From: Asterias rubens
Lineage: Eukaryota
Direction of reading: 5' to 3'
Length of the DNA stretch: 64,000 nt
Assembly: GCF_902459465.1 (NCBI RefSeq)
Contig: NC_047068.1
Span: forward strand, 5,828,001 to 5,892,000
The notes under the pieces are model-generated. The model was not told the DNA's origin. It saw only the letters and a list, made by a program, of their open reading frames with translations, and searched no databases. The position numbers and the translations under genes were made by a program. Shown piece by piece: positions 5,797 to 64,000 of this stretch (the first letter of the stretch is position 1; each line of letters begins with the position of its first letter).

Positions 5797-11783
<5,987 letters not shown>

Positions 11784-12178
11784 GTTGTTGTAGTAGTGCG
11801 TGTCAATCACGTAAAGCAACGCGAGAAATGCCTTTGGTCCGAGAATTCAATTCACCATTTGGAACAAAGTAGTCCGCATCGAAAAAACAAATTCATTTAG
11901 ATTGCGCATGAAATAACTTTATTATTGAAAACAAGATTTTTGAATTTTTCTCATCAGATATTTGACCGGGGACTAGAGGATTTCTTTTAATTTAAATTTT
12001 ATCTAAGAGTAATATTTCAAAATATCACTCCGCCATTTCCCTTTTTCCCCTTTTCAATAAAATTAGCAGTTGTTCGGTCCATGGTCCAACAAGCTAGCAT
12101 AGGTTGTGCACAACATTTACAGTGCCATTCTGCAAATATTAGATTTATTTTTCTCAATTGAAAACAACGGTATTGAAG
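11784..12178. promoter_or_regulatory. Putative bidirectional promoter of TVP23 and PLD6
   Basis: The two divergent start codons are only 395 bp apart. Transcription start sites are not determinable from sequence. Confidence 0.7.
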
Positions 12179-15337: not shown

Positions 15338-15700
15338 TAAAGGAACACGATGCCTTGGATCGGCTGAGTTGCGTTTGTAAAAGTTTTTTATAAAATGCAT
15401 ATGATTAGAAAGATATTTTAAAAGTAGAATATAATGATCCACACAAGTTTTCCCTGAAATTGCGTGGTTTTCCTTACTTAGCAAACCAACATGGTCGGCC
15501 AGTTATGAGAGTAAACAATTTTACTCCAATAATGGCCGACCGTGTTAGCCTGAAGAGGTAACAGGAAAACCACGCAATTTCGAGTGATACTTGTGTGGAT
15601 CATTATATTATACTTTTAAAATATCTTTCTAATCATATGCATTTTATAACAAATGGTTGCAAATGTTACATGACCGCTTCAAGGCAATGTGTTCCTTTAA
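15338..15700. mobile_element. TTAA-type palindromic MITE family B
   Basis: aggaacacg(a/t)tgccttggatcgg ... ccaaggcaacgtgttcct|TTAA termini and an internal palindrome. A truncated copy lies at 29362-29535. Confidence 0.8.
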
Positions 15701-37827: not shown

Positions 37828-40800
37828 ATGAAACCGAAAGCCAGATTACTTAAGCATCACCTCCTCATTTTGGGACTAGGAATAATGTTCCGATTCTTAA
37901 GAAGTTATTTCAATGAGATTGTAAAAGAAGGTGAAAACATCGGATGCATCGCCGTGTTTGGAATGTTTACTATAAACATGATCTGGAACGGTGTAATAAA
38001 GAGTCTGGCTGTGATGCTACCGACTCTACAGGAACAGTTCGGTGCTTCAACGTGGCTGGTTGGGTGGATGATAGCTTTAATAGACGGCACTTGTGACCTA
38101 GCAGGTACGTCGGCCTTGCCCTGCCGTCAAAAAAAGGGTCGGTCACACAATAATAATATTTATTTATTCGGGCAATCACATTTACAAGCACATGTACATA
38201 CATTAAACATATTTAAGAAAACAAAGTAAAACAACAGTGGGGTGCCCAGGAGAGCATAAAAGTAAAACAAAATATCGCCAAAAGGCGATGGAAAAGTTTC
38301 CGTATGGCGCCACCACTTTTTCATTCGGTATGAAATAATATAGTATCTAATATACCTCAAAGAGATATCCTTTTTGTAAAAATGAGGGGGAAAAGTGGTG
38401 GCGCCATACGGAAAGTTATCCTACAATGCTTATATGACACTGCAAAAATTTCTAAATATCTCTGGAACGCATTTGTCAATCACCCCCATTCCTTCACCGG
38501 TGTAAAAGTAAATCCGTGACCTAATTAGAAATGATTATTATCTGTTTAAGATTTTTCTTGTTCTTAAAATAACATGGCTAAAGTAGTCCCAGCCTATTTT
38601 CTAAACTATCCACCTGTGTAATAGTTAAAAAGCAGCTTTTCATAACTGAGAAGTCTCCCGAACACACAAACAATCTACTCCGCGGTAGTAGAGTAAAGAA
38701 AGACAGTTCTCTAAGAACCGCAAACCAAATATATAATATAAATAGCTCCCATCCAATGATGAGTTTTAGGCCTAAAACTTTCCTGATGACCAAACTGAAA
38801 CATCATTACGGGCTGTTCGTTTGATCTGACACATCATAATGTTTGATACCTTCCACAGCTCCGTTTGCACCAATATTAAGGGATGCGTTTGGAGTCAGAA
38901 TGGTCATCATGGTCAGCGGTGTGGCAATGTGTGCATCGCTTATCTGTTCAGCTTTTTCAACCAGTTTGTCAACAATGGCTGTCGTTCTGACAGTTATTGG
39001 AGGTGAGTTTTGTATTGAAACAAAAATCTGTCTTACAAAAATAGCACAGTAGTATATTTAGCTGGCATCGCTTCAAAGTGATGTACGGAGAACTAGTTTT
39101 AGCATGTAAAGCTTACGCTAAATTCTGTTTCGAAGGTTCAAGATATATTCAGGGGTTATCAGCAGTAATGTAGCAGTACTATGTAAGCGCCTTATACGGA
39201 GAGGATTACAGCGTGGCGTGTCGGTCATGGTCTAGCGGTTAAGACCACCGGATTTAAAAACTCCGGTGTGTCCGATCAGTAGAGTGTGGGCTCGAGTCCC
39301 AGTCGTGACACGTGTCGGATGATGACGTAGATCCGTTGGTCCCGTGTGTTGTAATGCAGGTAAAAGAACCCAGTGCACTTATTGAAAAGAGAAAATGTGG
39401 CCGGTGTTCCTGGTTTGATTGGCAGTATATTGCATTGCGCCACAACACCTTGTAAACCATTACATGTTGCTATGTAAAAGGAATAGGTCTCATACTTTAA
39501 ACGAAGTCCCACATACCTTGTATTGTTGACAAATACAGTATGTTAAAGCGCCTTGAGCGTCACCGGGTCCGGTGACGGATAAACGCACTAAATAAGAAGC
39601 CACTATTATTACTATCATTTATTGAGCCCAAATTTTGTGCCGTTAATGATAAGTCCAAGCATTTGATTAAATTTGACAGCAAAGTCTATTAAAGTCTGCA
39701 AAACGTACTTAAACATTATCTTAAACTTTATGGCAATTGTTTTATAGTTCTCTAACCAACACGGAACTCTTTTGCCCTCAGGACCCACACTTGGGATTGC
39801 CAGTATCATAACCAGGGATCTGATTGGTCGATGTTTCGACAAACACTACTCCACTGCGTTAGGCATAACTGGTGTAGGTGGCTCTTTGGGGTACATTATT
39901 TTTGCCCCTCTGACGCAATTCCTCTTGGACCTCTATGGTTGGAGAGCAACGATGATGCTACTTGGTGCACTGTTCTTCAATCTCACCGTGTGTGGCGCTC
40001 TAATGAAATCACGAGATGGAGGCTACAAGGCGGTCGACAATGGAAAACAGAGTGTTGTAGATGATCAAGATAACGGAGCAAGTCGACAAAGTCGATCATC
40101 TCATCGTACTTCCATTTGTAACTTAATCGCCATGAATCTACCTCTGGACTTATTCACATCAGTCCGTTACTGGCTTATAACATTCGCCTCTGTCATGTTT
40201 TTTTTCTGTATGTATGCGTGGTTGATCTACTTTGTACCACACGTCACTATGTCAAAGGGATTTTCGCCCACCGATGCTGCTAACTTCGTTTTAGTTTTTG
40301 GTGTTGGAAAGATGTTAGGGCATTTACTCGTTGGTCAAGCCGTTTCTGCTTGTGACAAGATTGGTCTAGATGCTAATGTGTGTATGTTGATATCACTTGG
40401 TGTGATGTCCACTTACTATTTCATTGATCCATGTTTGATAATTAGCTGGGCGATTTATGTCAGTGTATTCATTTATGGATGTTTCCATTCCTTCACGTAT
40501 ACACTGTTTGACGTCATCACAAAAGAAGCGATCGGAGCGGATCAGTTGGGAAGCGCCTTCGGATGGATTGCGTTCAAATGTGGTGCGATGAGATCTGCAT
40601 TGCTTTTCTTTCCAGGTAGGCGTTTTGTTGATGTTCATTATTTATGGCCTCAAAATAATATGGTGTTATTATCAGGTTTTTGAGCAGCATTGTTAAAGTT
40701 AAAGCGAGTCCTGTTTATCGTTTTCACTAAACCATTTTGTTTTGTCACTGTTTTGTTTTCCGTTCTAGGTTTGGTGTTTGATACACTCGGTAGCTACACC

Positions 40801-40899
40801 TTAGCATTCCTCATCATGGGTGGAATGAACTTACTGAGCTTCTTTGCACTGCTCTACCTGATGTGGTTAAAAAGACACCGTCTAGAAACTGGCATTTAA
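37828..40899 (+). CDS. Monocarboxylate transporter (SLC16/MCT-family MFS), 4 exons, ~461 aa
   Basis: Exons 37828-38104 (start could instead be ATG 37885), 38859-39002, 39782-40615 and 40769-40899, all joined by phase-1 GT-AG introns. MCT-like motifs: LPTLQEQFGASTWLVGW, FDKHYSTALGITGVGGSLG, LLDLYGWRATMMLLGALFFNLTVCGALMK, GLVFDTLGSYTLAF. Confidence 0.9.
38290..38421. mobile_element. Small MITE with ~30-bp TIR (truncated reverse copy at ~29600-29730)
   Basis: ggaaaagtttccgtatggcgccaccactttt and aaaagtggtggcgccatacggaaagttatcc. Confidence 0.75.
39213..39615 (+). mobile_element. tRNA-derived SINE, near full length (MCT intron 2)
   Basis: Box A-like tggtctagcgg, box B-like gctcgagtcc, conserved-type body (ccgttggtcccgtgtgttg...gtaaaagaacccagtgcactt), LINE-like tail aaagcgccttgagcg ending in (att)n-like repeats. 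Confidence 0.8.
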
Positions 40900-41153
40900 A
40901 TAGCTTGAACTTCCAATGCTTAAACCCTCCCAAATGGTCTGCAGCCAGTAGATCAAAAACATATTTTAATTATCAACTTTTTTTCTTTTTTTTGGCAAAA
41001 ACATGTGAAAACCTTTAAATTTCTATCCGCTGACAGGCCCGATCGACATGGTCTGTGCAAACAAATACTATAGTTTTACAGTGTAGAAACATACGAAACA
41101 AATGTTAAAAATTAAAACAAGTAATTTGTTTTCGAAACAGCATTGGTGTACCT

Positions 41154-42134
41154 CTTTTACTTAGAGAATATTCAGATATAACTCGGCCGAATTTTCAAGA
41201 ACATCCCGTTAAACACAATGTCACGCACCATATTACCACCACGGGCCCACCAGTGAATGCACGTCCCCGACGATTGGCCTCAGACAAGTTACATATAGCC
41301 AAAGCAGAATTTAATCACATGCTTGACTTGGGAATAATCCGTCCCTCAAAAAGCCCATGGTCTTCACCTTTGCACATGGTACCTAAGAAAAATGGCGATT
41401 GGAGACCTTGCGGTGACTATCGTGCTTTATATAATGCCACAACACCTGATAGGTACCCGATTCCCCACATTCACGATTTTGCAGCAACCTTACATGACAA
41501 GAAGATTTTCAGTAAAGTTGACCTAGTCAAGGCTTACCACCAGATACCTGTTGAACCCGAAGATATACCAAAAACGGCAATAACTACACCTTTCGGCCTT
41601 TTTGAATATATAAGAATGCCATTCGGGTTAAGAAATGCTGCGCAAACATTTCAAAGATTTATCGATCAAGTATTACACGGCTCGGATTTCACCTATGCTT
41701 ATATTGACGATTTGTTGATTGCGAGTGAAAATGAGCAACAACATGAATATCATCTTAGACTACTTTTTGACCGCTTACGAGAATACGGGGTGGTAATCAA
41801 CCCTAGTAAATGCGAATTCAAAGTAACTAGTCTTGATTTCTTAGGCCACCATATTGACTGTCATGGTATCAAACCTTTGGAAAATAAGGTGAACTTAATC
41901 CAAGACTTTCCAGTACCAAATTCACTCCGCAAATTGAGAGAATTTCTGGGATTGATCAATTTTTATCGGCGTTTCATCCCACATTGCGCTGATATTTTGC
42001 AACCCTTGACTGACATGCTGTCTTGCAAGTCAAAAGACAAAGCGATTTCACTGACCGAATGTGAATTGGCATCTTTCCAAAGAGCAAAATCTACTCTAGC
42101 TGAAGCTACTATGTTAGTACACCCAGCTGTAGAC
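41154..42134 (+). mobile_element. Ty3/gypsy LTR-retrotransposon pol fragment: reverse transcriptase and connection
   Basis: Open frame with [75 protein letters not shown]. Homology stops at MLVHPAVD. No gag, protease or LTR seen upstream. Confidence 0.95.
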
Positions 42135-42375
42135 ACCAATACATGTGTACACTGCAGATTGAGGACATACTTTTCATACTAATTTACTATCCAATGGAGG
42201 ACATTGCCAAAAGTCGAATGGTACCTATCGATGTGAGGACATAACACATGAATCCTTTTTCTTGCGGTTCACTAATGTGAATGTGTATACTGGCCTTATA
42301 GGAAATGTTTTGGGGGTGGTACACGATTTTCTTGTTCTTTGGGGGGGGGGGGGGGGGGGGGGGCAGGCCAAAGGT

Positions 42376-44322: not shown

Positions 44323-44455
44323 TTTGAAACAGTCTCATATAGGTCTATATAAAGGATTTTGATAGAAAAATTTGATGCCCGTTCTGCATTTGCCCCCCCC
44401 CCCCAATCCATGATCACAGCCTAAACTGTTCTAAGTGCCCATTTTCAAAGTACGT

Positions 44456-44824
44456 TCAAGGAACACGTTGCCTTGGATCGGTCGAGTTGGTCTTTGAAAA
44501 GCGTTTGTTATAAAATGTATATAGGTAGAAAGATGCTGTAAAAGTAGAATACAATGATCCACACAAACATGCCTCGAAATTGTACGGTTTTCCGTTTTAC
44601 ACAGTCGGCCATGTATGGGAGTCAAATTTGTTGACTCCCATAAATGGCCGACCGTGTTAGTTCGCACAGTAAAAGGAAAACCACGCTATTTCGAGGCAAA
44701 CTTGTGTGGATCATTGTATTCTACTTTTTACACATCTTTCCAACCATATGCATTTTATAACAAACGGTTAAAAACGCTTTTTTATATACCAACTCGTCCG
44801 ATCCAAGGCAACGTGTTCCTTTAA
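44456..44824. mobile_element. MITE family B copy, just downstream of the SF3 helicase stop
   Basis: aggaacacgttgccttggatcggtcgagttgg ... ccaactcgtccgatccaaggcaacgtgttcct|TTAA. Confidence 0.85.
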
Positions 44825-45659: not shown

Positions 45660-48600
45660 ATACGTTGTGTGGTATTCGGTGGGTAAAAGCCGGAACTATC
45701 ATTTTATGTTTTACTACGACGCTTAGGGAATCAACATAGATTGTACACCCATACGTTGTGCGTTATGCGGTGGGTAAAATCCGGAACGATGGCAGTTTTC
45801 TGTTTTACTACGGTGCTTAGGGTATCAACACCACATGGTAGTAGTTTCAGAGTAGATCGTAGGCATATACATACACACTGCGCCATTTGTGTTTAATATT
45901 TCAATATTGGCAACAACAACAAAAGCATCAAATGTAATTCACGCATTATACAATCTACAGAATTGAGACACAATGCTAAAGATACTCAGTTAATTGTTAC
46001 TAACATGTTTACTAACTGGGACAGCCAGTGTTGATGTTCATTTTTTTATCAAGTTTTTGCACAATATTATTCAGAACTCAATTTGTACAGGTTTAACATT
46101 CATCCGTTTAATAAGCCAGGGCCTAATCTAATATTATTATAGACCCTCGTCCATTGTTTGGAAGTCGAGGTCTCCATGCCCTGCGTCCATAGCTTTGATA
46201 GTACATGGTATGGGGGGGGGGGGGGGGTGCAAGAATATATGATTTGAGGGTTAATTTTTACCCCAACAAATGTTTGCAATAATTGTATTACATCAAGAAG
46301 AATGTGGCTAAAGAACTGAAGCTTGTAAATACTTATTGAACTATTTTGAGCGCTTTCAGTTCGGCTTCGCATCTTAATGTGGTTAGGGTGGGCTGTCGTA
46401 GCAACGTCCGGCAAGTCGTCTGTCACATTAAATGACTATTTTCAATTAATGTCAAGTTCAATTCATTCAATCATTTCAAATTTACAGAAATATTACATCA
46501 CAGGAGAACAACCACAATTAAGTTGAGGTTATAAAAACAATTTTTTTTCCACTGTCACCATTATGGTCATAATTGTTTGCAATATTATGAAGTTTTACAT
46601 TTTATTCGGCAGCTTTTTTTCTATGTGAGTTATAACAGCCTATTTATTATATAAAATATTACGTATAGTGGGGTCCAATCAACATGTATGTCTACAAGTT
46701 GTGTATAAATGCGAAGGTCGGTAAACCAGGTCGGAACTCTCATTAATTTCTGCAGTGTAGTGAAGTAACGTCATGTGTAAATAAATTCAGTAGATTTTTG
46801 GTGGCAATTGAAACAATCCCTGTTTTATGTTATCTACACAATTTTTTTTCGGGGATGTTTTCCAGTAAATCAAGCTCTGGTTAGAACTGAAGAAGTTTAT
46901 ACAATTTGAGTTAAAACCTAAATTCGCGCGTGCAGTCGTCGTCTACTAACTTCAAAATAGGTTCTCGTGAAAAAATAAATTGAGGGTAAAATTTGTAACG
47001 ATCAATTACAGATTTTCTTGTCAGTAAAACAACGATACTAACGGAATTGACTCACGAGTTATTCAGTGTTCAGCAGATTATACTCGATGTAATAAGTGCC
47101 TTAAACTACCGGGTAAAATTCCGAACGATCTCAGTTTCATTCTGCTGTTTTTCTGCACGACGCTTGTCACACACACACCATACGTTGTGTGGTATTCGGT
47201 GGGTAAAAGCCGGAACTATCATTTTATGTTTTACTACGACGCTTAGGAAATCCACGAAGATTGTACACCCATACGTTGTGCGTTATGCGGTGGGTAAAAT
47301 CCGGAACGATGGCAGTTTTCTGCTTTACTACGATGCTTAGGATATCAACACGTCATGGTTGTAGAGTAGATCGTATAGGCCTGTACATACACTGCGCCAT
47401 TCGCGTTGTTGTTGTAAATTATTATTTACATAGATTTTGACAATTTATTTTTAGTTTGAACACACCTATTCTGTAGATGTCAAAGCTGAATTTGTACAGG
47501 TTTAACATTCATCCGTTTAATAAGCCAGGGCCTAATCTAATATCATATTATAGACTAGACCCTCGTCCATTGTTTGGAAGTCGAGGTCTCCATGCCCCGC
47601 GTCCATAGCTTTGATAGTACATGGTATGGGGGGGGGGGTTCCAAGAAAATATGATTTGAGGGTTAATTATCACAACAAAAAATGTTACCAGTAATTGTAT
47701 TATATCAAGAAGATTATTTGAACTTTTCGAGGAATTTATATATTGTTCAAAATTATCGGCCCTGGTGGTATTCAAACTGCCACCGAGGGCGCTGTTGAAA
47801 AACGAATTCGCTCATTTTGAGGGTTTCCTTCCAGCCAGTTTTAACAAGTATTAATGTGGCTAAAGAACTGAAGCTTGTAATACTTATTAAACTATTAACA
47901 AGTCATGGTTGTAGAGTAAATCGTATAGGCCTGTACAAACACTGCGCCATTCGCGTTGTTGTTGTAAATTATTATTTACATAGATTTTGACAATTTATTT
48001 TTAGTTTGAACACACCTATTCTGTAGATGTCAAAGCTGAATTTGTACAGGTTTAACATTCATCCGTTTAATAACCCATACGTTGTGCGTTATGCGGTGGG
48101 TAAAATCCGGAACGATGGCAGTTTTCTGTTTTACTACGGTGCTTAGAGTGTCAACACCGCATGGTAGTAGTTTTTAGAGTAGATCGTAGGCCTATACATA
48201 CACCGCGCCATTTGTGGATAAAGGTCGGGACAACCAGTGTTGTTGTAAATTATTATTTACATAGATTTTGACAATTTATTTTTAGTTTGAACACACCTAT
48301 TCTGTAGATGTCAAAGCTGAATTTGTACAGGTTTAACATTCATCCGTTTAATAACCCATACGTTGTGCGTTATGCGGTGGGTAAAATCCGGAACGATGGC
48401 AGTTTTCTGTTTTACTACGGTGCTTAGAGTGTCAACACCGCATGGTAGTAGTTTTTAGAGTTCGTAGGCCTATACATACACCGCGCCATTTGTGGATAAA
48501 GGTCGGGACAACCAGTGTTGTTGTAAATTATTATTTACATAGATTTTGACAATTTATTTTTAGTTTTAACACACCTATTCTGTAGATGTCAAAGCTGAAT

Positions 48601-48900
48601 TTGTACAGGTTTAACATTCATCCGTTTAATAACCCATACGTTGTGCGTTATGCGGTGGGTAAAATCCGGAACGATGGCAGTTTTCTGTTTTACTACGGTG
48701 CTTAGAGTGTCAACACCGCATGGTAGTAGTTTTTAGAGTTCGTAGGCCTATACATACACCGCGCCATTTGTGGATAAAGGTCGGGACAACCAGTGTTGTT
48801 GTAAATTATTATTTACAAAGATTTTGTTTAGTTATTTTTTTAAAAGTTTTTATACAATTAATTCAGTAGATTTAAAAACTAAATTAATTTGTACAGGTTT
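45660..48900 (+). repeat. Array of ~1.5-kb composite modules, ending in a ~280-bp triple tandem (47957-48830)
   Basis: Blocks recur visibly: the cggtgggtaaaakccggaac subunits at 45681, 45772, 47111, 47201, 47292, 48098, 48379 and 48657, and aatttgtacaggtttaacattcatccgt near 46080, 47490, 48040, 48320, 48600 and 48890. Confidence 0.9.
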
Positions 48901-49250: not shown

Positions 49251-49908
49251 AGTTATTAGGCGTTGTGTTGCTCTAATACCTGGATGAGATAGGTTATGTA
49301 TCGAATCAAAAATGTTACGTCTAAATTCAGGAGTGACGTATGGACGTGGATGTCCGGTAGATGTGTCACAAATTATGGTATTGTGTGAAGTGAGAATAGG
49401 CACCTCTTCAAATTGAAGACTAGACGATTCACGTAGCTTACATAGCTCTGGGTCTGTCTTTTGCTGAAGGGCGATTTGTTCAAAGTTCACATCACTACCG
49501 GGAAGGCTAGGATGGGTAAACTAAACTTATGTCATATCGGGATAGAGCATCTGCTACAAGGTTTTCTTTACCTTTAATGTAACGGATGTCAGTACTGAAC
49601 TGAGAAATATAGTCTAAATGACGTACTTCTCTTGGCGAGTATATATCGGGCCTTGCATTAAAAGCATATATTATAAGTGGCTTATGGTCAGTCAGAATAT
49701 AGAAGTTACGACCTTCCAAAGCATACTTAAAATGACGTATGGCTAAGTATACAGCCAGCAATTCACGACCAAAAGTACTGTATCTAGTCTCTGCTGGTTG
49801 TAAACGTTTAGAAAAAAATGAAATTGGTCTCATAACGTCGTTGTCACATTGCTGAAGTACACCGCCAACTGCAAGGTTGGATGCATCTACCATTAGACAG
49901 AGAGGTAG
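49251..49908 (-). mobile_element. Ty3/gypsy pol fragment: RNase H and start of integrase Zn-binding region, frameshifted
   Basis: LPLCLMVDASNLAVGGVLQQ, FFSKRLQPAETRYSTFGRELLAVY, TDHKPL, GKENLVADALSR. After a frameshift near 49500: RPYVTPEFRRNIFDSIHNLSHPGIRATQRLIT, then truncated. Confidence 0.92.
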
Positions 49909-49989
49909 GTGGGGGGGGGGGGGGGGTGTGTGTGTGTGTAAGATCACTGTTGCACTGATTAACAAGCGTCTTACGGGAAAAAAAGACTA

Positions 49990-52900: not shown

Positions 52901-53690
52901 TCAGGATTCTATTAAAGTATTACCCCAAGAAAGTGCATCGTAAAAATAAGGGTTGATGTACATAACCAAATTCATTGATACATACTGGGGAAAACAAATC
53001 AAATTAATTTTAAGCTTAGAAATAATACAAATGTTTATAGAAACGGCTGTGGATGCATTGATATGTTTATAGGCTAGGCTAGCCCACCTTGTTGAGCTGT
53101 TAAATGGCTCCGCTTTTAACATCGGTCTCATCACTGTCAGCTTTTAACATCGGTCTCATCACTGTCAGCTTTTAACATCGGTCTCATCACTGTCAGCTTT
53201 AAACATCGGTCTCATCACTGTCAGCTTTTAACATCGGTCTCATCACTGTCAGCTTTTAACATCGGTCTCATCACTGTCACCATTACAGTGATGAGACCGA
53301 TGTTAAAAGCGGAGCCATTAATAGCTCAACAAGGTGGGCTAAGGCTAGGCTGCCCTGAATGACGGTTTAACCTTGAAATCCTGAATTATTTTAAAACATT
53401 TGTTGTCATAAACCGAACAAAATCGTTTGAAAGATTATTTAAACAAACTGCCATCGTTCCGGCTTTTACCCACCAAATATAACGAACAACGTACGGTGTG
53501 TACAATTTGTAGATCCCTAAAGCACCGTAGTAAAACAGAAAACTGCTATCGTTCCGGATTTTACCCACCGAATACCGCACAATGTATGGGGTGTACAATC
53601 TCCATGTAGATTCCCTAAGCCTCGTAGTAAAACAGAAATGATAGTTCCGGCTTTTACCCACCGAATACCGCACAGTACAACGTATGGCCG
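49990..53690 (-). repeat. Reverse-complement copies of the same composite module
   Basis: 49990-51190 mirrors 46080-47130, 51300-51545 mirrors the subunit block, degenerate pieces run to ~52200, and three more subunits lie at 53440-53690. Confidence 0.85.
53080..53341. mobile_element. Short foldback MITE with 6 x 28-bp tandem expansion of the left arm
   Basis: TIR tagcccaccttgttgagct; 9-bp TSD aggctaggc (53071-53079 and 53342-53350); unit gcttttaacatcggtctcatcactgtca at 53112-53279. Confidence 0.9.
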
Positions 53691-53833
53691 TGTGTGTACG
53701 ATCCCCCCCCCCCCGATACAGAAAACCAGAATGCTTTATGTCTGTGCGTGTGGCGTGTCCGTGGGGAATCCCCCAGCGCACGCAATGAAATTGAACCGCC
53801 ATCATTTTAAATCAGAATTCCTACTAATAAAAG

Positions 53834-53843
53834 TGGTGACGAG
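53834..53843 (+). other. Primer-binding-site-like motif upstream of gag
   Basis: tggtgacgag differs by one base from TGGCGACGAG, the complement of the 3' end of tRNA-Ser(GCT) as I recall it. It lies ~180 bp before the gag ATG. Confidence 0.5.
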
Positions 53844-54020
53844 TACAGGATCTGTTTATAGACACAGTTGGTGTGATCTGTCAATTCAAAACTCAAGTGA
53901 TCCAGACTCAATTGATCCTGGTAAATCAAGATACCTTGACATTTTCCCCAGGCTTAACGTACACCTGGACAGTTCCTGCGTGAGCGATACTCTACAACTA
54001 TAAAGTAAGCAGGCTACACC

Positions 54021-57000
54021 ATGGCGTGTAGTGCTATGCCTAACCTGGATCCATTTGTGTTTGACCCGCAGAGTGATGAGCCCACCGCTCTCAGTTCCAA
54101 ATGGGATAAATGGCTGAAACGTTTTGAAAGAGCTATGGTCGGTTATAACATTAATGGAGCAAAAAGAAAGCGGGCATTGCTATTGCATTACGGAGGTGAG
54201 CAACTTGAGACTGTTTTTGATACACTTTCTGACACAGGAGATGAGAATGATTATGAGAAGGCAATAGAAGCTTTGACGGCTCACTTCGTTCCAAACCCCC
54301 TCCATGAAACTATCATCTTCTTCAGGAGTTTGAAACAGAACCCGGAGGAAAACGTTGATCAGTTTTGTACTCGTCTCCGAAATGCAGCAGAAAAGTGTGA
54401 GTTTGGTGATCTGAATCGCCAACTGATCATACAATTCAGTATAGGATGCTCTTCAATAGAACTTCGGCGTGAAGCACTTGACAATATTCTTGTCGAGAAG
54501 GCGTGCAATCTACCACAGCTGTTAGACTTCACACAGTCCCTTGAATTGTCAAACAAACAAGCCGATGCCGTTCAAAACCAAACCGACATTCAGCAAAACC
54601 CTGACAAACTTTCTCAGAGTCAGACTCAACACATCGGTGACAAACCTACCCGTCATGAGAGCAAAGACCAAGGAGTTCTCTATGATGAGAGCAGACATAA
54701 GCCATTGTACGACAGTACCAAGAATAGACCTACACAGCAAAACGGAAATAGTGCAACTCCGGTAAGCTAAACCATTAACTTGTATGCCCCGCCGGTGTCC
54801 GATGCAATTGTATCCGCCATGCAGAACTGTCCGCTCCGGACACTTTTGCACATGCAATCGTGTCCGGGGCTATGCAAAAATCGTCCGGCGGACATGTACA
54901 TGACGGTACATGTATGTGCGTGCATAAGCGAGCGTGCATGCACTAAACATACGTATATCACGTAATGATTGCACCGAATACCCAACGGCCGAACATTTCC
55001 CGTGTCATTCATGACATTATACACTTAGCTTGAAAAACAAACAAATGGCCAACGTGTTCCGTCGATCAAGGGCCTTTAATTTGCTGCAAGGACGGTCTTG
55101 CAGGGGGAGGACACAACTGCATATGCAAATGTGTCCGGGCGGACACAATTGCATTATGCAGCGGCGTCCGGGCGGACACGGTTGCATACGCAATAATGTC
55201 TTCCGGATAGTATTGCAAATAGGACATCATTGGAGTTCGGGGATTACAGTGTTGTCCAGAAACGCCGGGCCGGTGATTTCGCCAGCTACTTGGTCCTTTT
55301 GATTTCGCCCCCCAGTTTTTGCCGCCTCCAATTTAATTTTCCCCAGTTAAAATTACTGTCAACGACTGGAATTTTTCAAAAATGAAAACGCCGTATTAGA
55401 CACAGACATAGCACGAACCATTCTGGCATCCTGTCATCGCACCTGGCGTCACTGCAACACCTTCTCCATTGTACATTGTTTTTATTTTAAACATTATAGC
55501 CAAGGACTGCAAATAGAGTATTTGCTGCTCCGACGGGGCAACCCCCACCCAACTGTAGCAATTGTATACATGGTTGACAAAAGAATTAGTAACAGTTTAC
55601 AAGGGTAAATGGTAAAAATAACATTTGAAATTGGTCAAGGTTTAGTGTTGTACACAATCAGTCAGGTGGTATAGGAATATGCTACAAAATAAAATTTACT
55701 CAGTTTATTTTAACGTAAAATACGGTAATTATCCTTAATAATAATTATAATAATAATACTAATAATAATAATCATAATTTATTCATTTGTATTGTGCCCA
55801 ATCCCATCAAATAATACCCAATCAACCCACAAACGGCTCATCAGAGAGAAAGATTTCCAACTCTGAACAAGAAAAAGATGAAAGTTCAAAGAAAACCAAG
55901 GCTAGTGATAAAACAAGCAGAGCGGGCTCCCTGGGTGCAGTAAGTGATTTTACATAAGTGTATGCGAGTTTCCAAAGTAAAGCTTTATTATAAAGCCCTA
56001 TAGCTAGAGCGCTACGTTCATCCGGTAGTCGCAGGTTCGAGTCCCTCTCTCCTATCAATTTGTTCAATCAAAATTAATTTTCAAATTTACCCAGTCTTCA
56101 TTTCTTATCTGATAACAGGTTTCAGTGTCAACCTCCAAACAATTGTTGCATAAAAACGGCCAATCAAAGAAAGCAAAGTTCAATCCTGAACTGGAAAAAG
56201 AGATATTGCAGAGTTACGAGGAATTTAAAGACAGAAGCTACATGGCTACGGTACGTAATTTTTTTTTTAGTTGCTTATAACGAAAGTTATATGTGAACTG
56301 CATAACAATTATTGCACATCAGTCATACAGCAACAATTTTCCAATGAAATCTGATAAATTTCTTGCCTAACGCTAACAAACACGGGAGTTTTTTACAGAA
56401 ACGAAACCGTTAATGCTACTCTCACATAGGGAGAACGCTACTGAATGTGCTTACGAACGGAAATATTTAACAATCGCTCAAACTTCGCAACATTCGCCAC
56501 AAATTCACCACGCTCACAAGTCATTCTCCACCTCCTTACGAAGATCGGTCACTTTATGCTGCTCTCACACGGCGAATATGCTAGCGAATATGCTATCGGA
56601 AGGACATATTTGACAATCGCTCAAACTTCGCAGCATTCGCCGTGTCTTCGTAAGCGTTGGTAACAAATTCGGAACGCACAAAAATTATTCCCCACCTCCT
56701 AACGAAGATCGCTCAATTTACAATCCGGTTTGTTAATTTCAGCAAATGTTGCGAAGATGGTCATTCGGCTTGATTTTCGTTAGCATTGGTAACGTTGGTA
56801 AAGCGTGCATAAGCGTTTGAAACGTTCGTGAAGGCATTGACAAGCGTTGGTAAGCATTTGTAAACATTCGTAAGATATTGGTAAGGAGTGGGCCAACCGA
56901 AGACGATCGAGGGGTGAGACCGATATGAAAATATTCACTATCCAACCGCCATTTTGGACGAATTCTACGCGCAGTTCAAATATTCATGTTCGCAAGAACA

Positions 57001-59102
57001 TTCGCCACTCTGTGAGAGGGGCAATACGAAGCGCCTCCGTACACTCAGCGAATGTTGTGAAGACGGTAATTCGCCATCGATTTGCGTAAGCATTTGGTAA
57101 GCCATTGGTGGTACTGTTGGTAAAGCGTGCGTATTATGCGTAAGATATTGGGAAGGAGAGGTTTAAGGACGACAGAGAACATTCACTATCAAATCGCAAC
57201 TTTTGGGCGAATTCATCGCGAATTTCAAACATTCGTATTCGCAAGATATTCGCCCAAGTGTGAGAGTATAGCTTAAAGGAACACGTTGCCTTGGATCGGT
57301 TGAGTTGGTCTTTGAAAAGCATTTCAACCGTTTGTCATAAAATGCATATGATTAGATAGACACGTTAAAAGTAGTATATAATGATCCCCACCAGTATCAC
57401 TCGAAATTGCGTGGTTTTCCTTTGACCTCGTCGACTAACACGGTCGGCCGTTTAAACTTGACTCCCATAAGTGGCCGACCGTGTTAGTTCGTATAGGAAA
57501 ACCACGCAATTTTGAGGCAATATTGTGTGGATCATTGTATTCTACTTTTAAAACGTCTTACTAACCATATGCATTTTCTAACTAAACGGTTACAAACGCT
57601 TCTTAAAGACCAACTCGACCGACCCAAAGTAACGTGTTCCTTTAAGAACGGATACATAATACCAATAAGCTCTTACTTGATTTCTCATTTCAATAATTTT
57701 CAGGCAATTAATATCAGGAGAAACAGCGCAAATTTGGCTGATTTTACACCGTTACAACTGTCAGATAAAATTCGTCGTTTAGTGAATAATAAAAAAGGTA
57801 AGATAATACTAAAAAGTAAAAGGAGAAATTTATATAAATTTCAAGGGCCAAACGGGGGAAAAATTGAAAAAGAATAATGGAATAAACAAAAATAACAGTT
57901 CTTAATAATATGGGGTTATTCGTTTAATAAAATATGCATCCTTAGTAATTTTAAAAGTGTTCTATTGTGTTCTTTTTTACAGATCAGAAGAAGACTTCAA
58001 GGTATTTGCGATACATTTTATTACATGATTCATTAAAAAAGTTAAGTGTAATACCAACAACCATCAGCCATACAGACAGTGAAATGATTAATGTAAAAAT
58101 TATAAAGAAAACACCAATTATTCTCCGAAACCTGAAATGTTGCACCGAGGGGATTCGGAGAGGTTATTTGGAATGACGGAAAACAATTATAAAACAATTA
58201 ATTTTTTAATTGTTCGCTGAATTAAACAAAATGAATGAACTATAATAATTGATTTAACATACGTTATGTTTGTATTCATCTCCCTTTCCCTCAAGAACTC
58301 GACGTGCTAGCCGCAAGATATCCGATGATGAGTAAGTATAAGAAAAAGGGACTAAAAGGGTTTTGACGAGTTCTTAAACTGCCTTAAAAACCGGCAGGGT
58401 CGTGGCCGTGCGATAGGCCCTTGCCTTCGGCTCGGGCCTTTGTCGCACTGCCACTATCCTGCAAGGTTTTTAACGGCAGTTTAAGAACGAGTCACTACTC
58501 TATTATTCCCATTCATAATATGCCCTTTTGGTTACAAGGCGTTATAGTAAGAAACTCTGTAAAACTGATCTGTTTTCCTTGAGCTCTGTACGTGTGTTGC
58601 ATTTTTATGACTGACAGTTTTTGGATATGCATTCGTGCGCGTAGTACATGCATCTAATGTAACCGGTTATAAACAGCTCCAGCTGGTAATAATCAATCGT
58701 TTTAACATCACACGTGACGCGCTCTCCAGCAATAGGAAAGGCAAAACTATTTGAGGTATTTAAGAATGGTAAGTTATAATCCTTTGTTTGTTATTCATAA
58801 ATACCCGGGCAGTTTATCCATTCCAATTGGTCGAGAGGGTATCACGTGGGGTTGTTTATCGCACGACCAGGTCCCTGCCACATAATTTATTTTGGATCCG
58901 AAAATGATGCGGGTGTTTGAGGGGGCTGGGTCTACACAGGTGCGCCGAGTTAATATGGAAAGCCGGGAAACAATATATGAAACAGTTTCCAACTTTGATT
59001 CACAGTATTCACTGAAATCAAAATAACAATCTAAATTGATTTAACTTATTTTCATTTCTCGTTTTTAAGGCTCGAGTTTATCCGCGAGCAATGCAATGAT
59101 GA
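54021..59102 (+). CDS. Candidate spliced gene whose first exon is a Ty3/gypsy Gag capsid domain (3' end not found in window)
   Basis: Exon 54021-54761 (WDKWLKRFE, RKRALLLHYGG, FRSLKQNPEENVDQFCTRLRNAAEKCEFG) ends at CCG|GTAAGC. Phase-compatible GT-AG exons follow at 56119-56250, 57983-58001, 58296-58331 and 59070-59102, with a possible extra exon at 55847-55939. Unspliced, the ORF stops at 54770. The Gag identity is high confidence; the splicing is predicted. Confidence 0.7.
54787..55273. repeat. GC-rich imperfect foldback built from gtccgg/ccggac short repeats
   Basis: Repeated tgtccggg...ggaca motifs in opposite orientation on the two sides; begins directly after the gag exon. Confidence 0.45.
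56411..57272. mobile_element. MITE-like element with internal repeats
   Basis: Imperfect TIR gctactctcaca / tgtgagagtatagc; internal duplicated block acaatcgctcaaacttcgcarcattcgcc. Confidence 0.55.
57273..57645. mobile_element. MITE family B copy
   Basis: TTAA at 57273 and 57642-57645; family B termini. Confidence 0.85.
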
Positions 59103-59610
59103 GTAAGTGTTATCTAAGTAATGTATTATCTATTATTAGTTAGTTTAAATTTTCGGTAATATTTTGCACAAAACAACGGCTCAAAAATTGTTATGATTGC
59201 AAGTTAATTATAGATTTGGTCATAGTGAAGATATATATTTTACTGTGTGCATCAACTTTGTAAATAAGTCTCAGAGGTTTTGAATCGAGAAAACACGTCA
59301 AACCTTTTCTGAAAAAAAAATGTATTTATGACAAACATGAACCACAAAAATACCCATTACATTTTCGTTCAAAATTTAATCCATTAATTCAAACTTTTCA
59401 TTTTACTTACTGTAGGCCCAAAAACTCTGAACTATTCTCATAGCAAGGGTAAAAAGATGGCAGCCAAAGGATGAACAAAACAGAGCGCCACCAAGCGACC
59501 CGTCCCTCGGAGGTAATTTTCAAAGGGTTGCAGTATGAACAAAGCTGGGAAACCGTTCGTACCAATTACACTTGCAATGTAAATGTGTTAAATGGAATGT
59601 ATTTGAAAAT

Positions 59611-61697
59611 TACATGAGTAGGATTTGAAAATGTGCATGGTAGTAATGCAATCTGGTGAGGGTTGGAGTAACACCATGTACTTGAGTAGGATTTGAAACT
59701 TTGCATGGTGGAGATACAATCTAATAAGGTTTGCAGTAACACCATGTACATGAGTAGGATTTGAAACTTTGCATGGTGGAGATACAATCTAGTAAAGTTT
59801 GCATGTACATGAGTAGGATTTGAAACTTTGCACGGTGGAGATACAATCTAGTAAGGTTTGCAGTAACATCATGTACATGAGTAGGATTTGAAACTTTGCA
59901 TGGTGGAGATACAATCTAGTAAAGTTTGCAGTAACACCATGTACTTGAGTAGGATTTGAAACTTTGCATGGTGGAGATACAATCTAATAAGGTTTGCAGT
60001 AACACCATGTACTTGAGTAGGATTTGAAACTTTGCATGGTGGAGATACAATCTAATAAGGTTTGCAGTAACACCATGTACATGAGTAGGATTTGAAACTT
60101 TGCATGGTGGAGATACAATCTAGTAAGGTTTGCAGTAACACCATGTACATGAGTAGGATTTGAAACTTTGCATGGTGGAGATACAATCTAATAAGGTTTG
60201 CAGTAACTCCATGTACTTGAGTAGGATTTGAAACTTTGCATGGTGGAGATACAATCTAGTAAGGTTTGCAGTAACACCATGTACATGAGTAGGATGTTAA
60301 ACTTTGCATGGTGGAGATACAATCTAATAAGGTTTGCAGTAACTCCATGTACTTGAGTAGGATTTGAAACTTTGCATGGTGGAGATGCAATCTAGTAAGG
60401 TTTGCAGTAACACCATGTACATGAGTAGGATTTGAAACTTTGCATGGTGGAGATACAATCTAGTAAAGTTTGCATGTACATGAGTAGGATTTGAAACTTT
60501 GCACGGTGGAGATACAATCTAGTAAGGTTTGCAGAAACATCATGTACATGAGTAGGATTTGAAACTTTGCATGGTGGAGATACAATCTAGTAAAGTTTGC
60601 AGTAACACCATGTACTTGAGTAGGATTTGAAACTTTGCATGGGGGAGATACAATCTAATAAGGTTTGCAGTAACACCATGTACTTGAGTAGGATTTGAAA
60701 CTTTGCATGGTGGAGATACAATCTAATAAGGTTTGCAGTAACACCATGTACATGAGTAGGATTTGAAACTTTGCATGGTGGAGGTACAATCTAGTAAAGT
60801 TTGCATGTACATGAGTAGGATTTGAAACTTTGCACGGTGGAGATACAATCTAGTAAGGTTTGCAGTAACATCATGTACATGAGTAGGATTTTAAACTTTG
60901 CATGGTGGAGATACAATCTAATAAGGATTGCAGTAACACCATGTACATGAGTAGGATTTTAAACTTTGCATGGTGGAGATACAATCTAGTAAGGTTTGCA
61001 GTAACACCATGTACATGAGTAGGATTTTAAACTTTGCATGGTGGAGATACAATCTAATAAGGATTGCAGTAACACCATGTACATGAGTAGGATTTTAAAC
61101 TTTGCATGGTGGAGATACAATCTAGTAAGGTTTGCAGTAACACCATGTACATGAGTAGGATTTGAAACTTTGCATGGTGGAGATACAATCTAATAAGGTT
61201 TGCAGTAACACAATGTACTTGAGTAGGATTTAAAACTTTGCATGGTGAAGATACAATCTAGTAAGGTTTGCAGTAACACCATGTACTTGTCGAGTAGGAT
61301 TTGAAACTTTGCATGGTGGAGATACAATCTAGTAAGGTTTGCAGTAACACCATGTATATGAGTAGGATTTGAAACTTTGCATGGTGGAGATACAATCTAA
61401 TAAGGTTTGCAGTAACACCATGTACTTGAGTAGGATTTGAAACTTTGCATGGTGGAGATACAATCTAAAAAGGTTTGCAGTAACACCATGTACTTGAGTA
61501 GGATTTGAAACTTTGCATGGTGGAGATACAATCTAGTAAGGTTTGCAGTAACACCATGTACATGAGTAGGATTTGAAACTTTGCATGGTGGAGATACAAT
61601 CTAATAAGGTTTGCAGTAACACCATGTACTTGAGTAGGATTTGAAACTTTGCATGGTGGAAAAACAATATAGTAATGTTTGCAGTAACACCATGTAA
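59611..61697. repeat. 68-bp satellite, ~31 copies, with 59-bp deletion variants
   Basis: Unit catgtac(a/t)tgagtaggatttgaaactttgcatggtggagatacaatcta(g/a)taaggtttgcagtaacac; period 68 (e.g. 59941 to 60009). Confidence 0.97.
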
Positions 61698-62114
61698 ACC
61701 CTACATTATGGGACTTGAATCTTTACAATTTAGTAAGTAATTCAACAATAGAGGGAGGGGTGCGAAGGGGAAGGCTACATTCAACACTTTAGGATTCAAA
61801 TTAAGCTAATCAAAGACCGTTATTCCATAATGAGGTGATGTATTAAAATTAAGAATAGCTATGCATTTCGTTGCATTGATCGACAGTTTTGTTGAATGAT
61901 AGATTGCGATGTTGTGCTGTAAAGGTATAGTCTTACAGGTGCAACTGACAAGAATGTAAATAATTAAAATCAACTGGAAATATAATTTTTATTTTTCAAA
62001 CATAAGAGTACATGATAAGTAACAATGAAACATTTTTAAAGTAATTGTTTGTAACGATTTATATATTTAAAAAAAAATAAAGTTGTTTTGGGGTTGACTC
62101 CGCTTACCCATTTT

Positions 62115-62547
62115 GTGACGTCAATCGAGGCAGACTTTGCCTTTAAGCGTAGAGTAAATACACGTGCAAAGTACGTGCAAATCCAAGTCGTGAGTTTGTA
62201 CGATTCTTTCATTTTTCCGGCAATGCCGACCAAGTGTATTGTTGCTGGATGCAGCAAAACAACTAAAGATGGGGGTCAGTCTGCATGGCTGGTCAGACTC
62301 ACAAGAGCAATAGTGCCTAGTGGTCCGGTCTGAGGTTGTGCAGCTTTTTTTCTTCAAATATCGCGCCTCGATTGACGTCACGAACAGCGCCCTCTCGGGT
62401 CGGGGCCTACTCTTAAATTTGTAAATAGGCTAAGAACTAATTTTTTAGAAGGTTAGCTAACTGTTTATTCACATTCCACTCATCAAAACACATATATTAG
62501 TGACAAAAGCTTTATTTTGACAAAATGCCACTTCCAGGTGACTTTAA
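62115..62547 (+). mobile_element. Kolobok-like element remnant with a frameshifted THAP-domain start
   Basis: ATG 62223 reads MPTKCIVAGCSKTTKDG; removing one G continues VSLHGW, a THAP-like N-terminus. A 17-bp inverted repeat lies at 62115-62131 and 62365-62381. The right end is caggtgact|TTAA (62544-62547); the left end was not identified. Confidence 0.65.
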
Positions 62548-62585
62548 GGCATTACTTTAGGGATTATTTGATTTATAAAGATTTT

Positions 62586-62716
62586 AGGCCGTGTCCGAAT
62601 TGGCGACTTCGGCTACAGCTACGGCTAGATCAGCGCGTCTGTCAGTGTTGAAGGATAGGCAGACGCGCGCGCCCTAGCCGTAGCTGTAGCCGAAGTCGCC
62701 AATTCGGACACGGCCT
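62586..62716. mobile_element. Hairpin MITE
   Basis: Perfect 43-bp inverted repeat (62586-62628 and 62674-62716) plus inner pairing gcgcgtctg/cagacgcgc. Confidence 0.85.
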
Positions 62717-63097
62717 CATATTCAATGCTTGTAGGCAAATTAACTATGCATAATTATACGAATAATTACTCTATGCTATTGTAAATGTTCATCTCTTCGT
62801 AATTAGCGAGGCCTAATTGAGATAGGTGTGGAGCATAGTTAGACTACTAGCTGGGTTAGGCAGTTAGGTCTGTTTGTGTGTCCTTTTTCTGTTGGTTTCT
62901 AAACAATTACACTTTTTTTTGGGTAAACGATGAGAGTAAATCCAACTTTTGTGTGGAGGAAGGATCGAGACCCGCTGATTTTAATAACAATAATTAGAGA
63001 GGATCGGATCGGTTGGTGAGTAGGATGTTAGAATGCTTTTTTTGGGGGGGGGGGGGGGGGGGGGTACAATTATAGTAACAATAATATTCTACTGTTG

Positions 63098-63420
63098 TAA
63101 AGGAACGTTACATAATTGGTAAGAAACAAATACCGTGAAGATCACAGATTTAAATAAAACAAAACACGGTCTATGATGATGATAGTGAAAAACATCCTTT
63201 GAAATAAATAATCTAATTTCGCGTTTGGAGTTTATCGCTCAGTGAGCGTTTTATTCATTTTTGTTTTGACATCGATGCAATGCACACAGCGGTTTTACGC
63301 TTTTCTTTCGTGATCTTGAACTTCTGCAAGTTTGTTAGTTTATGTATAAGGTGGATAACATAAAGTGCCTACACTGCCAGCATTTTTTGCTAGCAAAATC
63401 AATTCTGTAATGTTCCTTTC
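63098..63420. mobile_element. MITE family C copy
   Basis: aggaacgttacataattgg ... caattctgtaatgttcct termini; body gtgaagatcacagattt matches 16490-16790. Confidence 0.7.
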
Positions 63421-64000
63421 ATGAACAGCAATTGTTTGAAATGCACATTGTTTGGATCAGAATTGACTTTAACAAGTAGGGTAAACTAAAGGTGGCTGGC
63501 TGTTACTTGAATTTCTGAGATTTATGGATCTATTGTGTACCTGGTTTGCTTTGTAAGGAGCTTTGCTGAAGAGTAATTTTGAGCCTGCAGTGAGCAACCC
63601 AAAACAATGTGTCAAGCCTACTGATTCCGAACCGTCCTATACAAACACTTAATTTATTTAAGGATTTTTTTTTCACAAATTCTTTTTAAATCAACCTTTA
63701 GGTCCAGATTTCCAAAATGCAGAAAAATCACGAAATTGGGAGCTCGATGCCATGCCTTTGCTATGCCTAAATGTATACAAAACGCGTATCACGCCTTTTG
63801 GTTTCAAAAATCAAATATCCCACCAGCATGGACCGTCTCTATTTCCCGTAAGATAGCGCGCAGCGTCTTGCTGCGCGTCTCGTTTACGATGACACAACTC
63901 TTATGCCGAACCTTCAGCACAACCTTTGAAACTCCCCACTCCCCCCCCCCCGCCCTCAATAACCGGATCTAAGCAAATATAAGCTGACATAGCTAAGATA

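What the first reader, a model, noticed from the sequence alone, without database searches (positions are those of the whole stretch)
54021..59102. Candidate domesticated Ty3/gypsy Gag spliced in frame to host-like small exons
Seen: an uninterrupted 247-codon Gag capsid exon with a good start context (accATGG), no CCHC knuckle and no protease or pol after it. A strong donor (CCG|GTAAGC) sits two codons before the stop. Four downstream exons with canonical GT-AG signals (132, 19, 36 and 33 nt) keep the frame open through phases 0-0, 0-1, 1-1, 1-1, and a possible fifth (55847-55939) also ends in phase 0. Known: Ty3/gypsy Gag domestication produced Arc, PEG10/RTL and PNMA, several of which form capsids. 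Inference: this is an invertebrate-deuterostome Gag exapted as the N-terminal exon of a longer multi-exon protein, possibly capsid-forming or an assembly scaffold. An intact frame amid decayed TE ORFs hints at selection.
Basis: partly seen in the sequence, partly recalled or inferred. Interest (0 to 1): 0.85.

Follow-up and report, generated by a model that had tools for sequence, protein, structure and literature searches.

The report
Starfish gene built from retrotransposon capsid
A single-copy gene of the starfish Asterias, already annotated but uncharacterised, has a retrotransposon (Ty3/gypsy) capsid as its first coding exon. That exon is spliced to six tiny exons for a fast-evolving tail with no known relatives, so it is a plausible but unproven young case of a host taming a capsid gene.

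Summary
The window is Asterias rubens. ORF 54021-54770 is coding exon 1 of RefSeq gene LOC117292597, an "uncharacterized protein" of 360 aa.

Its junction 56250>57983 and its frame for the last three exons are therefore wrong. Its optional exon (55847-55939) is frame-broken in the sister species.

Exon 1 is a Ty3/gypsy-type Gag capsid:
- relatives carry CCHC-PR-RT-RNaseH;
- the family profile hits dArc1/2;
- the predicted fold matches PNMA2, MLV, Arc and PEG10 capsids.

The zinc knuckle has decayed, and there is no PR, pol or LTR.

A. amurensis has a syntenic ortholog with the same exons. Introns carry 7 indels per kb, while the CDS has only two, both in frame. Capsid dN/dS is about 0.3-0.4, which is weak evidence. 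The tail gives about 3, with exon 3 at 15% divergence against 4% in introns. The tail has no homolog among 1.84 billion proteins.

Verdict: a probable young, genus-level Gag co-option, a new member of a known kind. Expression, deeper orthologs and function were not tested.

The parts
54021..54761 (+). Coding exon 1 (247 codons): Gag-derived. Start ATG is at 54021 in accATGG. The donor CCG|GTAAGC follows 54761.
   Evidence: It is 96.1% identical to A. amurensis with no indel.
54090..54596 (+). Capsid (CA) core, aa 24-192: nine to ten helices forming N- and C-lobes. Residues 82-158 carry no amino-acid change between the two species.
   Evidence: AlphaFold models have pLDDT 72-92 here. Foldseek hits are PNMA2, MLV, dArc and PEG10 capsids. 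The family profile hits dArc1/2 at E about 1e-6.
54597..54761 (+). Linker at the position where relatives carry two CCHC-type zinc knuckles. The cysteines are lost here; a 'KPTRH(E/D)(S/T)K' remnant aligns with P0005.
   Evidence: Alignment A1.
54135..54137 (+). Met39, the start of annotated isoform X2 (322 aa).
54768..54770 (+). TAA that ends the unspliced reading (249-aa Gag-only product if intron 1 is retained).
56119..56250 (+). Coding exon 2 (132 nt, phase 0-0). A. amurensis has a 9-nt in-frame insertion here.
57704..57797 (+). It differs at 14 of 94 positions from A. amurensis, and all differences change the amino acid.
57983..58001 (+). Coding exon 4 (19 nt, phase 1-2), identical in both species.
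58296..58331 (+). Coding exon 5 (36 nt, phase 2-2), with a 6-nt in-frame indel between species. Exons 4 and 5 together encode the basic patch KKDQKKTSRTRRASRK.
59070..59102 (+). Coding exon 6 (33 nt, phase 2-2), identical in both species.
59416..59443 (+). Coding exon 7 (28 nt, ending in stop TAG), identical in both species. Exons 6 and 7 encode the acidic C-terminus LEFIREQCNDEPKNSELFS.

Best explanation
This is a young, lineage-restricted host gene (Asterias LOC117292597) made from a solitary Ty3/gypsy Gag.

Shown:
- The element has lost its LTRs, protease and pol, and the cysteines of its zinc knuckles.
- The two-lobed capsid (CA) domain is kept.
- A GT donor two codons before the old stop joins it to six very short downstream exons.
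- Those exons encode a 113-residue charged tail that has no relatives.
- The gene sits at the same place in A. rubens and A. amurensis.
- Its frame has been kept free of frameshifts and stops, while the introns accumulated about 7 indels per kb.

Inferred:
- The protein works through CA-CA contacts, either with itself or with Gag of related elements.
- The tail supplies new functions. It has a conserved basic patch (NLS-like or nucleic-acid-binding-like), a conserved acidic end, and a hypervariable middle.
- I favour a decoy or restriction role against related retroelement Gag (Fv1, RTL8 or Drt2-like). The reasons are that the RNA-packaging knuckles are gone and part of the tail evolves faster than neutral.
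- An Arc/PNMA-like capsid former is the second choice.

The specific role is a guess, at about 0.3 for restriction and about 0.2 for capsid carrier.
For: - Gene model: the spliced window sequence equals XP_033630597.1. A. amurensis XP_071797801/2 has the same exons in a collinear locus.
- Gag identity: relatives at 35-48% identity carry CCHC knuckles, and several carry a DSGA protease. L004 reads Gag-CCHC-PR-RVT_1-RT_RNaseH.
- Gag identity: the family profile hits the dArc2 and dArc1 capsids at E = 5.5e-7 and 7.9e-7.
- Fold: nearly all Foldseek hits are capsids. C-lobe TM-scores are 0.6-0.74 to MOAP1, dArc2 and PEG10.
- Solo state: no pol similarity lies downstream, and no other copy is in the window.
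- Indels: 31 events in 4340 intron bp, against 2 in 1083 CDS bp (9 and 6 nt, both in frame). P(no frameshift) is about 0.001.
- Gag substitutions: 16 nonsynonymous against 13 synonymous. dN/dS is 0.31 (NG86) to 0.40 (ML), P = 0.044. Residues 82-158 are unchanged.
- Tail substitutions: 23 nonsynonymous against 2 synonymous, dN/dS about 3, P = 0.013.
- Exon 3 has 14/94 mismatches against 4% in introns (P = 2.5e-5). Exons 4, 6 and 7 have 0/80 (P = 0.037).
Against: - Only two closely related species could be compared. Counts are small and the Gag dN/dS test is marginal.
- The total substitution rate of exon 1 (3.9%) equals that of introns (4.0%). Nonsynonymous sites run at about 0.7 of the intron rate.
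- Intron indel rates are inflated by repeats, so the indel P-values are optimistic.
- No transcript evidence could be examined. The models are automated predictions, and the A. amurensis one may have been guided by the A. rubens protein.
- No ortholog was seen outside Asterias.
- The query itself is below Pfam cut-offs (PNMA 19 bits against 25).
- All Foldseek E-values are above 0.01.
- High divergence in exon 3 could be a complex mutational event rather than selection.
Confidence: 0.62

Rival explanations
1. It is a decaying retrotransposon relic with no host function. A leftover Gag ORF happens to be transcribed, and gene-prediction software chained it to weak downstream exons. The open frame in two young sister species is survival by chance.
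For: - Exon 1 diverges as fast as the introns.
- Whole-CDS dN/dS is 0.67-0.87.
- The tail has no homologs, has low-confidence structure, and its exon content differs between species: A. amurensis has an extra 51-nt exon in a 371-bp segment absent from A. rubens.
- No ortholog was found beyond the genus.
Against: - No frameshifting indel in 1083 bp, against about 6.7 expected (P about 0.001). Both CDS indels are in frame. P(no stop) is 0.07.
- There is a deficit of nonsynonymous change in CA, with 77 consecutive unchanged residues.
- Tail changes are non-neutral in both directions: 23N:2S overall, while three exons have zero change.
- The same seven-exon model is annotated in both species.
Confidence: 0.28
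2. It is the gag of a young or still active Ty3/gypsy element, so the intact frame only reflects recent insertion.
For: The closest relatives are gag genes of LTR elements. Decayed RT and RNaseH ORFs lie 4-13 kb upstream.
Against: - No LTRs, PR, RT or IN flank it, and the zinc knuckles are lost.
- It occupies the same site in A. amurensis with 4% diverged introns, so it predates the species split.
- The nearest other protein in 5.8 billion is 48% identical.
- The upstream pol fragments are on other elements and are absent from the A. amurensis stretch.
Confidence: 0.02
3. Origin variant: the small exons belong to an older host gene, and the Gag inserted upstream and captured its splice acceptors. 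The alternative is that the exons arose de novo from non-coding DNA.
For: - The tail has conserved pieces: exons 4, 6 and 7 are identical.
- A weak HTH_32-like match (E = 0.012-0.1) covers the RRASRK..SDDELEFIREQ stretch.
- Capture by splicing is how other transposon-host fusions arose (established knowledge: SCAN-ZNF genes, transposase fusions).
Against: - An exhaustive HMMER search of the 113-aa tail against 1.84 billion representatives found only itself, a read-through ORF of the same locus, and a spurious repeat protein.
- No Pfam domain passes threshold.
- Exon content still differs between the two species.
Confidence: 0.2

Closest known systems
Arc / Drosophila dArc1 and dArc2 (Ty3/gypsy Gag-derived capsid genes)
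   Same: A two-lobed CA from a Ty3/gypsy Gag, kept without pol. The best sequence-profile match among solved structures is E about 1e-6, and the C-lobe TM-score reaches 0.74.
   Different: The origin is independent, with no orthology and about 17-19% identity in structural alignments. Arc coding sequences are single-exon (own knowledge). Here CA is spliced to six extra coding exons. Capsid assembly and RNA transfer are untested here.
PNMA family (PNMA2, MOAP1/PNMA4)
   Same: PNMA is the best Pfam family (E = 0.001), and relatives pass its cut-off. The top Foldseek hit of the CA-only model is the PNMA2 capsid, and MOAP1 CTD gives TM 0.69.
   Different: The protein itself is below the Pfam gathering score. 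PNMA genes are mammalian, largely intronless in the CDS, and carry an N-terminal RRM-like domain (own knowledge). There is no such domain here, but there is an orphan C-terminal tail.
SCAN-domain zinc-finger genes and other transposon-host fusion genes
   Same: A Gag capsid piece is used as an exon and joined by splicing to other coding exons (own knowledge).
   Different: SCAN keeps only the CA C-lobe and is joined to recognisable KRAB/ZNF exons. Here both lobes are kept and the partner exons have no recognisable domain or homolog.
Gag-derived restriction or antagonist factors: Fv1, enJS56A1, RTL8 (PMC11684626), yeast Drt2 (PDB 9rxy)
   Same: These are solo Gag/CA proteins without enzymatic parts. 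Part of this protein shows excess amino-acid change, as is known for Fv1 (own knowledge). The Drt2 CA-CTD is among the fold hits.
   Different: No interference with any element has been tested. The fast-evolving part here is the non-Gag tail, not the CA surface. The host is an echinoderm.
Co-opted gag genes catalogued by Wang and Han 2021 (PMC8321522)
   Same: The same criteria apply: solo gag, synteny, intact ORF and dN/dS below 1.
   Different: That survey covered only events above family level and mentions no echinoderm. This event is so far seen only within one genus.

Membership tests
Ty3/gypsy (Metaviridae-type) Gag capsid | Sequence relatives are gag genes of elements with PR-RT-RNaseH order | tested here: met
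   P0006/L004 reads Gag-CCHC-DSGA protease-RVT_1-RT_RNaseH (PF17917, 112.7 bits). P0016 and P0017 show PR or RT directly after Gag. One relative (P0003) sits next to LINE-type APE/RT ORFs, read as a neighbouring insertion.
Ty3/gypsy (Metaviridae-type) Gag capsid | All-helical two-lobed CA fold | tested here: met
   Nine to ten helices at pLDDT 72-92. Foldseek top hits are almost only capsids, with C-lobe TM 0.6-0.74, but all E-values lie between 0.02 and 1.
Ty3/gypsy (Metaviridae-type) Gag capsid | Passes a curated Gag family threshold (Pfam PNMA, Retrotrans_gag or Arc_C) | tested here: not met
   The query scores 19 bits on PNMA against a cut-off of 25. Relatives P0004, P0006 and P0007 pass PNMA or Retrotrans_gag. 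The family profile hits dArc1/2 at about 1e-6.
Ty3/gypsy (Metaviridae-type) Gag capsid | CCHC zinc knuckle(s) after CA | tested here: not met
   The cysteines are absent in both Asterias proteins where relatives have two knuckles. This is read as secondary loss.
Co-opted (domesticated) gag gene | Solo gag: no LTRs, no pol, not multicopy | tested here: met
   Searches cover the window and the A. amurensis locus. The nearest other protein in the database is 48% identical. Whole-genome copy number could not be tested.
Co-opted (domesticated) gag gene | Syntenic orthologs with intact ORF across species | tested here: met
   A. rubens and A. amurensis are collinear from 53728 to 64000, and all seven exons are intact.
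Co-opted (domesticated) gag gene | Purifying selection (dN/dS below 1) | tested here: inconclusive
   CA gives 0.29-0.40 with P = 0.014-0.044. The whole CDS gives 0.67-0.87, and the tail about 3. Frame maintenance is stronger evidence (P about 0.001).
Co-opted (domesticated) gag gene | Expression as a host mRNA or protein | not testable with these tools
   Only RefSeq predicted models exist (three in A. rubens, two in A. amurensis). No reads or peptides are available here.
Capsid-forming Gag-like proteins (Arc, PEG10, PNMA2) | Self-assembly into particles | not testable with these tools
   Needs expression and electron microscopy.

The most novel reading that the evidence does not exclude
This may be a Gag domestication caught early, in an echinoderm. 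A retrotransposon capsid domain under constraint has recruited newly born exons, and part of that tail is under diversifying selection. The protein would then act as a capsid-targeting restriction factor against Ty3/gypsy elements, an invertebrate analogue of Fv1. That would link de novo exon birth with genome defence.
Probability: 0.15. Interest if true: 0.65.

Novelty: new member of a known kind. Interest (0 to 1): 0.42.

Why it matters
Known capsid domestications (Arc, PEG10/RTL, PNMA, SCAN, Gagr, Fv1) are mostly old and come from vertebrates or flies. My four literature searches and two papers I checked (PMC8321522, PMC11090083) turned up no echinoderm case.

A genus-level example still shows the steps of taming:
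- loss of the knuckle and pol;
- use of a donor just before the old stop;
- exon gain that differs between sister species;
- a conserved capsid next to a fast-changing tail.

This would give a tractable system for asking how a capsid becomes a host gene, and whether early selection is for defence. If it is only a relic, it is a useful caution about automated gene models on transposon remains.

Tried and rejected
- Exact look-ups of isoforms P0001 and P0002 found nothing. The longest isoforms P0019 and P0023 had to be used.
- phmmer of the single protein against PDB gave no hit.
- Pfam on the full proteins gave only sub-threshold hits for the tail: HTH_32, Arc_PepC and SPT6_acidic. A resemblance of the tail to Myb/SANT-like domains, recalled from memory, found no support.
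- The exhaustive HMMER search with the tail found no real homolog.
- The JGI metagenome scan failed with the alignment and found no relative with the protein.
- A LINE-ORF1 origin was considered because P0003 is followed by APE and RT ORFs. It was rejected because several other relatives carry DSGA protease and RT_RNaseH.
- ARAGORN and Rfam found nothing in the window, so the tRNA-like box near 56030 stays unexplained.
- The A. rubens metagenome contig L003 was tried as polymorphism data. It has 1 difference in exon 1 against 19 in the first 229 nt of intron 1. That intron stretch is as different from L003 as from A. amurensis, so it is a hypervariable region and not a fair neutral standard.
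- Whole-model Foldseek E-values stayed above 0.01 even with a CA-only model.
Full report
**What is in the sequence**

ORF 54021-54770 (+, 249 aa) is real. It begins at ATG in the context accATGG, and GTAAGC lies two codons before its TAA. A protein search identified the window as Asterias rubens. The ORF is 100% identical to RefSeq 'uncharacterized protein LOC117292597', and A. amurensis has a 94% identical protein.

Splicing the window at seven exons reproduces isoform X1 (P0023, 360 aa) exactly:

| Exon | Coordinates | Length |
|---|---|---|
| 1 | 54021-54761 | 741 nt |
| 2 | 56119-56250 | 132 nt |
| 3 | 57704-57797 | 94 nt |
| 4 | 57983-58001 | 19 nt |
| 5 | 58296-58331 | 36 nt |
| 6 | 59070-59102 | 33 nt |
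| 7 | 59416-59443 | 28 nt |

It missed the 94-nt exon 3 and the terminal exon. It consequently read exons 4-6 one base out of frame and proposed a junction (56250>57983) that is not in the model.

Its optional exon 55847-55939 is not annotated. In A. amurensis it has a 20-nt deletion that creates stops.

**What exon 1 is**

- Pfam gives only a sub-threshold PNMA hit for the protein itself (E = 0.001, 19 bits against a cut-off of 25).
- Relatives at 35-48% identity carry two CCHC-type knuckles after the aligned region. Several continue into a DSGA aspartic protease.
- One relative on a 4.3-kb contig reads Gag-CCHC-PR-RVT_1-RT_RNaseH, the Ty3/gypsy order.
- One other relative lies next to LINE-type APE/RT ORFs. 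Given the rest of the evidence, I read this as a neighbouring element.
- A profile of the family hits the capsid domains of Drosophila Arc2 and Arc1 at E = 5.5e-7 and 7.9e-7.
- AlphaFold models give nine to ten helices in two lobes at pLDDT 72-92 for residues about 20-190.
- Foldseek returns almost only retroviral and retrotransposon capsids: PNMA2, MLV, dArc1/2, PEG10, MOAP1, Ty3 and Copia. C-lobe TM-scores are 0.6-0.74, although every E-value is above 0.01.

In the Asterias proteins the knuckle cysteines are gone. Nothing resembling PR, RT or RNaseH lies downstream in either species. No repeat pair flanks the ORF. It is a solo Ty3/gypsy-type CA.

**Is it a gene under selection?**

The A. amurensis locus (L001) is collinear with window 53728-64000, and all seven exons and their splice sites are present. 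The two species were estimated to have split about 28 Mya (PMC11090083).

Evidence on frame maintenance:
- Introns differ at 4.0% and carry 31 indel events in 4340 bp.
- The 1083-bp CDS has two indels, of 9 and 6 nt, both in frame.
- The chance of no frameshift is about 0.001, and the chance of no new stop is 0.07.

Evidence at the amino-acid level:

| Region | Nonsyn : syn changes | dN/dS | P |
|---|---|---|---|
| Gag exon 1 | 16 : 13 | 0.31 (NG86) to 0.40 (ML) | 0.044 (N deficit) |
| Gag core, aa 1-175 | 8 : 10 | 0.21 (NG86) | 0.014 (N deficit) |
| Tail (exons 2-7) | 23 : 2 | 2.7-3.6 | 0.013 (N excess) |

- Residues 82-158 of Gag carry no amino-acid change.
- This evidence is modest. The overall substitution rate of exon 1 equals the intron rate.
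- Exon 3 differs at 14 of 94 positions, all nonsynonymous (P = 2.5e-5 against the intron rate).
- Exons 4, 6 and 7 have no change in 80 nt (P = 0.037).
- Part of the exon-3 cluster can also be aligned as a +1/-1 indel pair four bases apart, which would be a compensated shift.

Caveats: there are two species only, counts are small, and the indel rates come from repeat-rich introns.

**The tail**

The 113 residues after Gag have no homolog among 1.84 billion representative proteins. The only matches were the protein itself, a read-through ORF of the same locus and a spurious repeat protein. No Pfam domain passes threshold, and predicted helices have low to moderate confidence.

The tail contains a conserved basic patch (KKDQKKTSRTRRASRK) and a fully conserved acidic end.

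A. amurensis isoform X1 has an extra 51-nt exon. It lies inside a 371-bp segment that A. rubens lacks, so the exon content is still changing. 'Host-like' is therefore unproven, and a de novo origin is at least as likely.

**Mechanism**

Shown: a solo CA, splicing signals that bypass the old stop, synteny, and frame maintenance.

Inferred: the protein acts through capsid-type contacts, with the tail supplying new basic and acidic motifs. I favour interference with Gag of related elements (as for Fv1, RTL8 or Drt2) over Arc/PNMA-like particle formation. The knuckles are lost and part of the tail changes faster than neutral. Neither role is tested.

The main rival is a transcribed relic stitched together by prediction software. 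I give it about 0.28. A young active element is excluded by the shared position and the missing parts.

**Comparison and novelty**

This is the same kind of thing as Arc, PNMA, PEG10, SCAN and Gagr, but an independent event. It is unusual in joining a full CA to orphan micro-exons.

The systematic survey of gag co-option looked only above family level and lists no echinoderm (PMC8321522). My other literature searches found nothing on this gene.

The gene is already annotated, but only as uncharacterised. I rate it a new member of a known kind, of moderate interest.

**Limits**

- No RNA evidence was available.
- There was no whole-genome copy count.
- No other Asteriidae genomes could be reached.
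- No stretches of N occur in the window, so nothing was filled in.

Noticed in passing
window 59611-61696: A 68-bp satellite, 31 copies at 92% match, starts about 170 bp after the gene's stop codon. The same satellite is at the matching place in A. amurensis (L001 16367-17112) and again at L001 1-489.
   Followed up: partly
window 57273-57645 (intron 2); also 15338-15700, 29362-29535, 44455-44824; L001 14006-14375: A repeat of about 370 bp matches its other copies in both orientations, so it is a palindromic, MITE-like element. It sits just upstream of exon 3 in both species.
   Followed up: partly
window 41253-42182 (+) and 49507-49965 (-): There are open fragments of LTR-element pol: a 309-aa RVT_1 ORF and a 152-aa RT_RNaseH ORF. 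They lie in a repeat-rich stretch (about 41-53.7 kb) with no counterpart in the fetched A. amurensis locus. They are not linked to the Gag gene.
   Followed up: partly
window 37581-41138 vs L001 4382-720: A block holding an MFS-transporter exon (39772-40683) is 91-95% identical between the species. It is inverted relative to the Gag gene, and lies about 13 kb away in A. rubens against about 5 kb in A. amurensis. Homology upstream of the gene ends 293 bp before the ATG.
   Followed up: no
L003 (ENA marine metagenome contig, SOLA station) vs window 53779-54990: An environmental-DNA contig carries this starfish gene with one amino-acid difference (I82K). The first 229 nt of intron 1, GC-rich with 33-bp repeats at 55105-55193 nearby, differ at 19 sites plus 3 indels. 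Many of the variants are shared with A. amurensis.
   Followed up: partly
window 57704-57733 (start of exon 3): Nine of the first 30 bases differ between the species, changing 7 of 8 consecutive residues (NIRRNSAN against CILENNPD). Part of this can be explained by a +1/-1 indel pair four bases apart.
   Followed up: partly
window about 55990-56050 (intron 1): The stretch contains a tRNA-like B-box (GGTTCGAGTCCC), suggesting a SINE or tRNA-derived fragment. ARAGORN and Rfam report nothing.
   Followed up: partly
window 8893-9348 (-), 12158-12667 (+): ORFs with DUF846 (E = 3.5e-32) and PLD-like (E = 3.3e-08) domains, presumably exons of ordinary host genes.
   Followed up: no
window 47957-48826; 53112-53279; 53445-53674: Tandem arrays: 278 bp x 3.1 at 99% identity, 28 bp x 6, and 93 bp x 2.4. 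The 93-bp unit recurs at 45.6, 47.2 and 51.4 kb.
   Followed up: no
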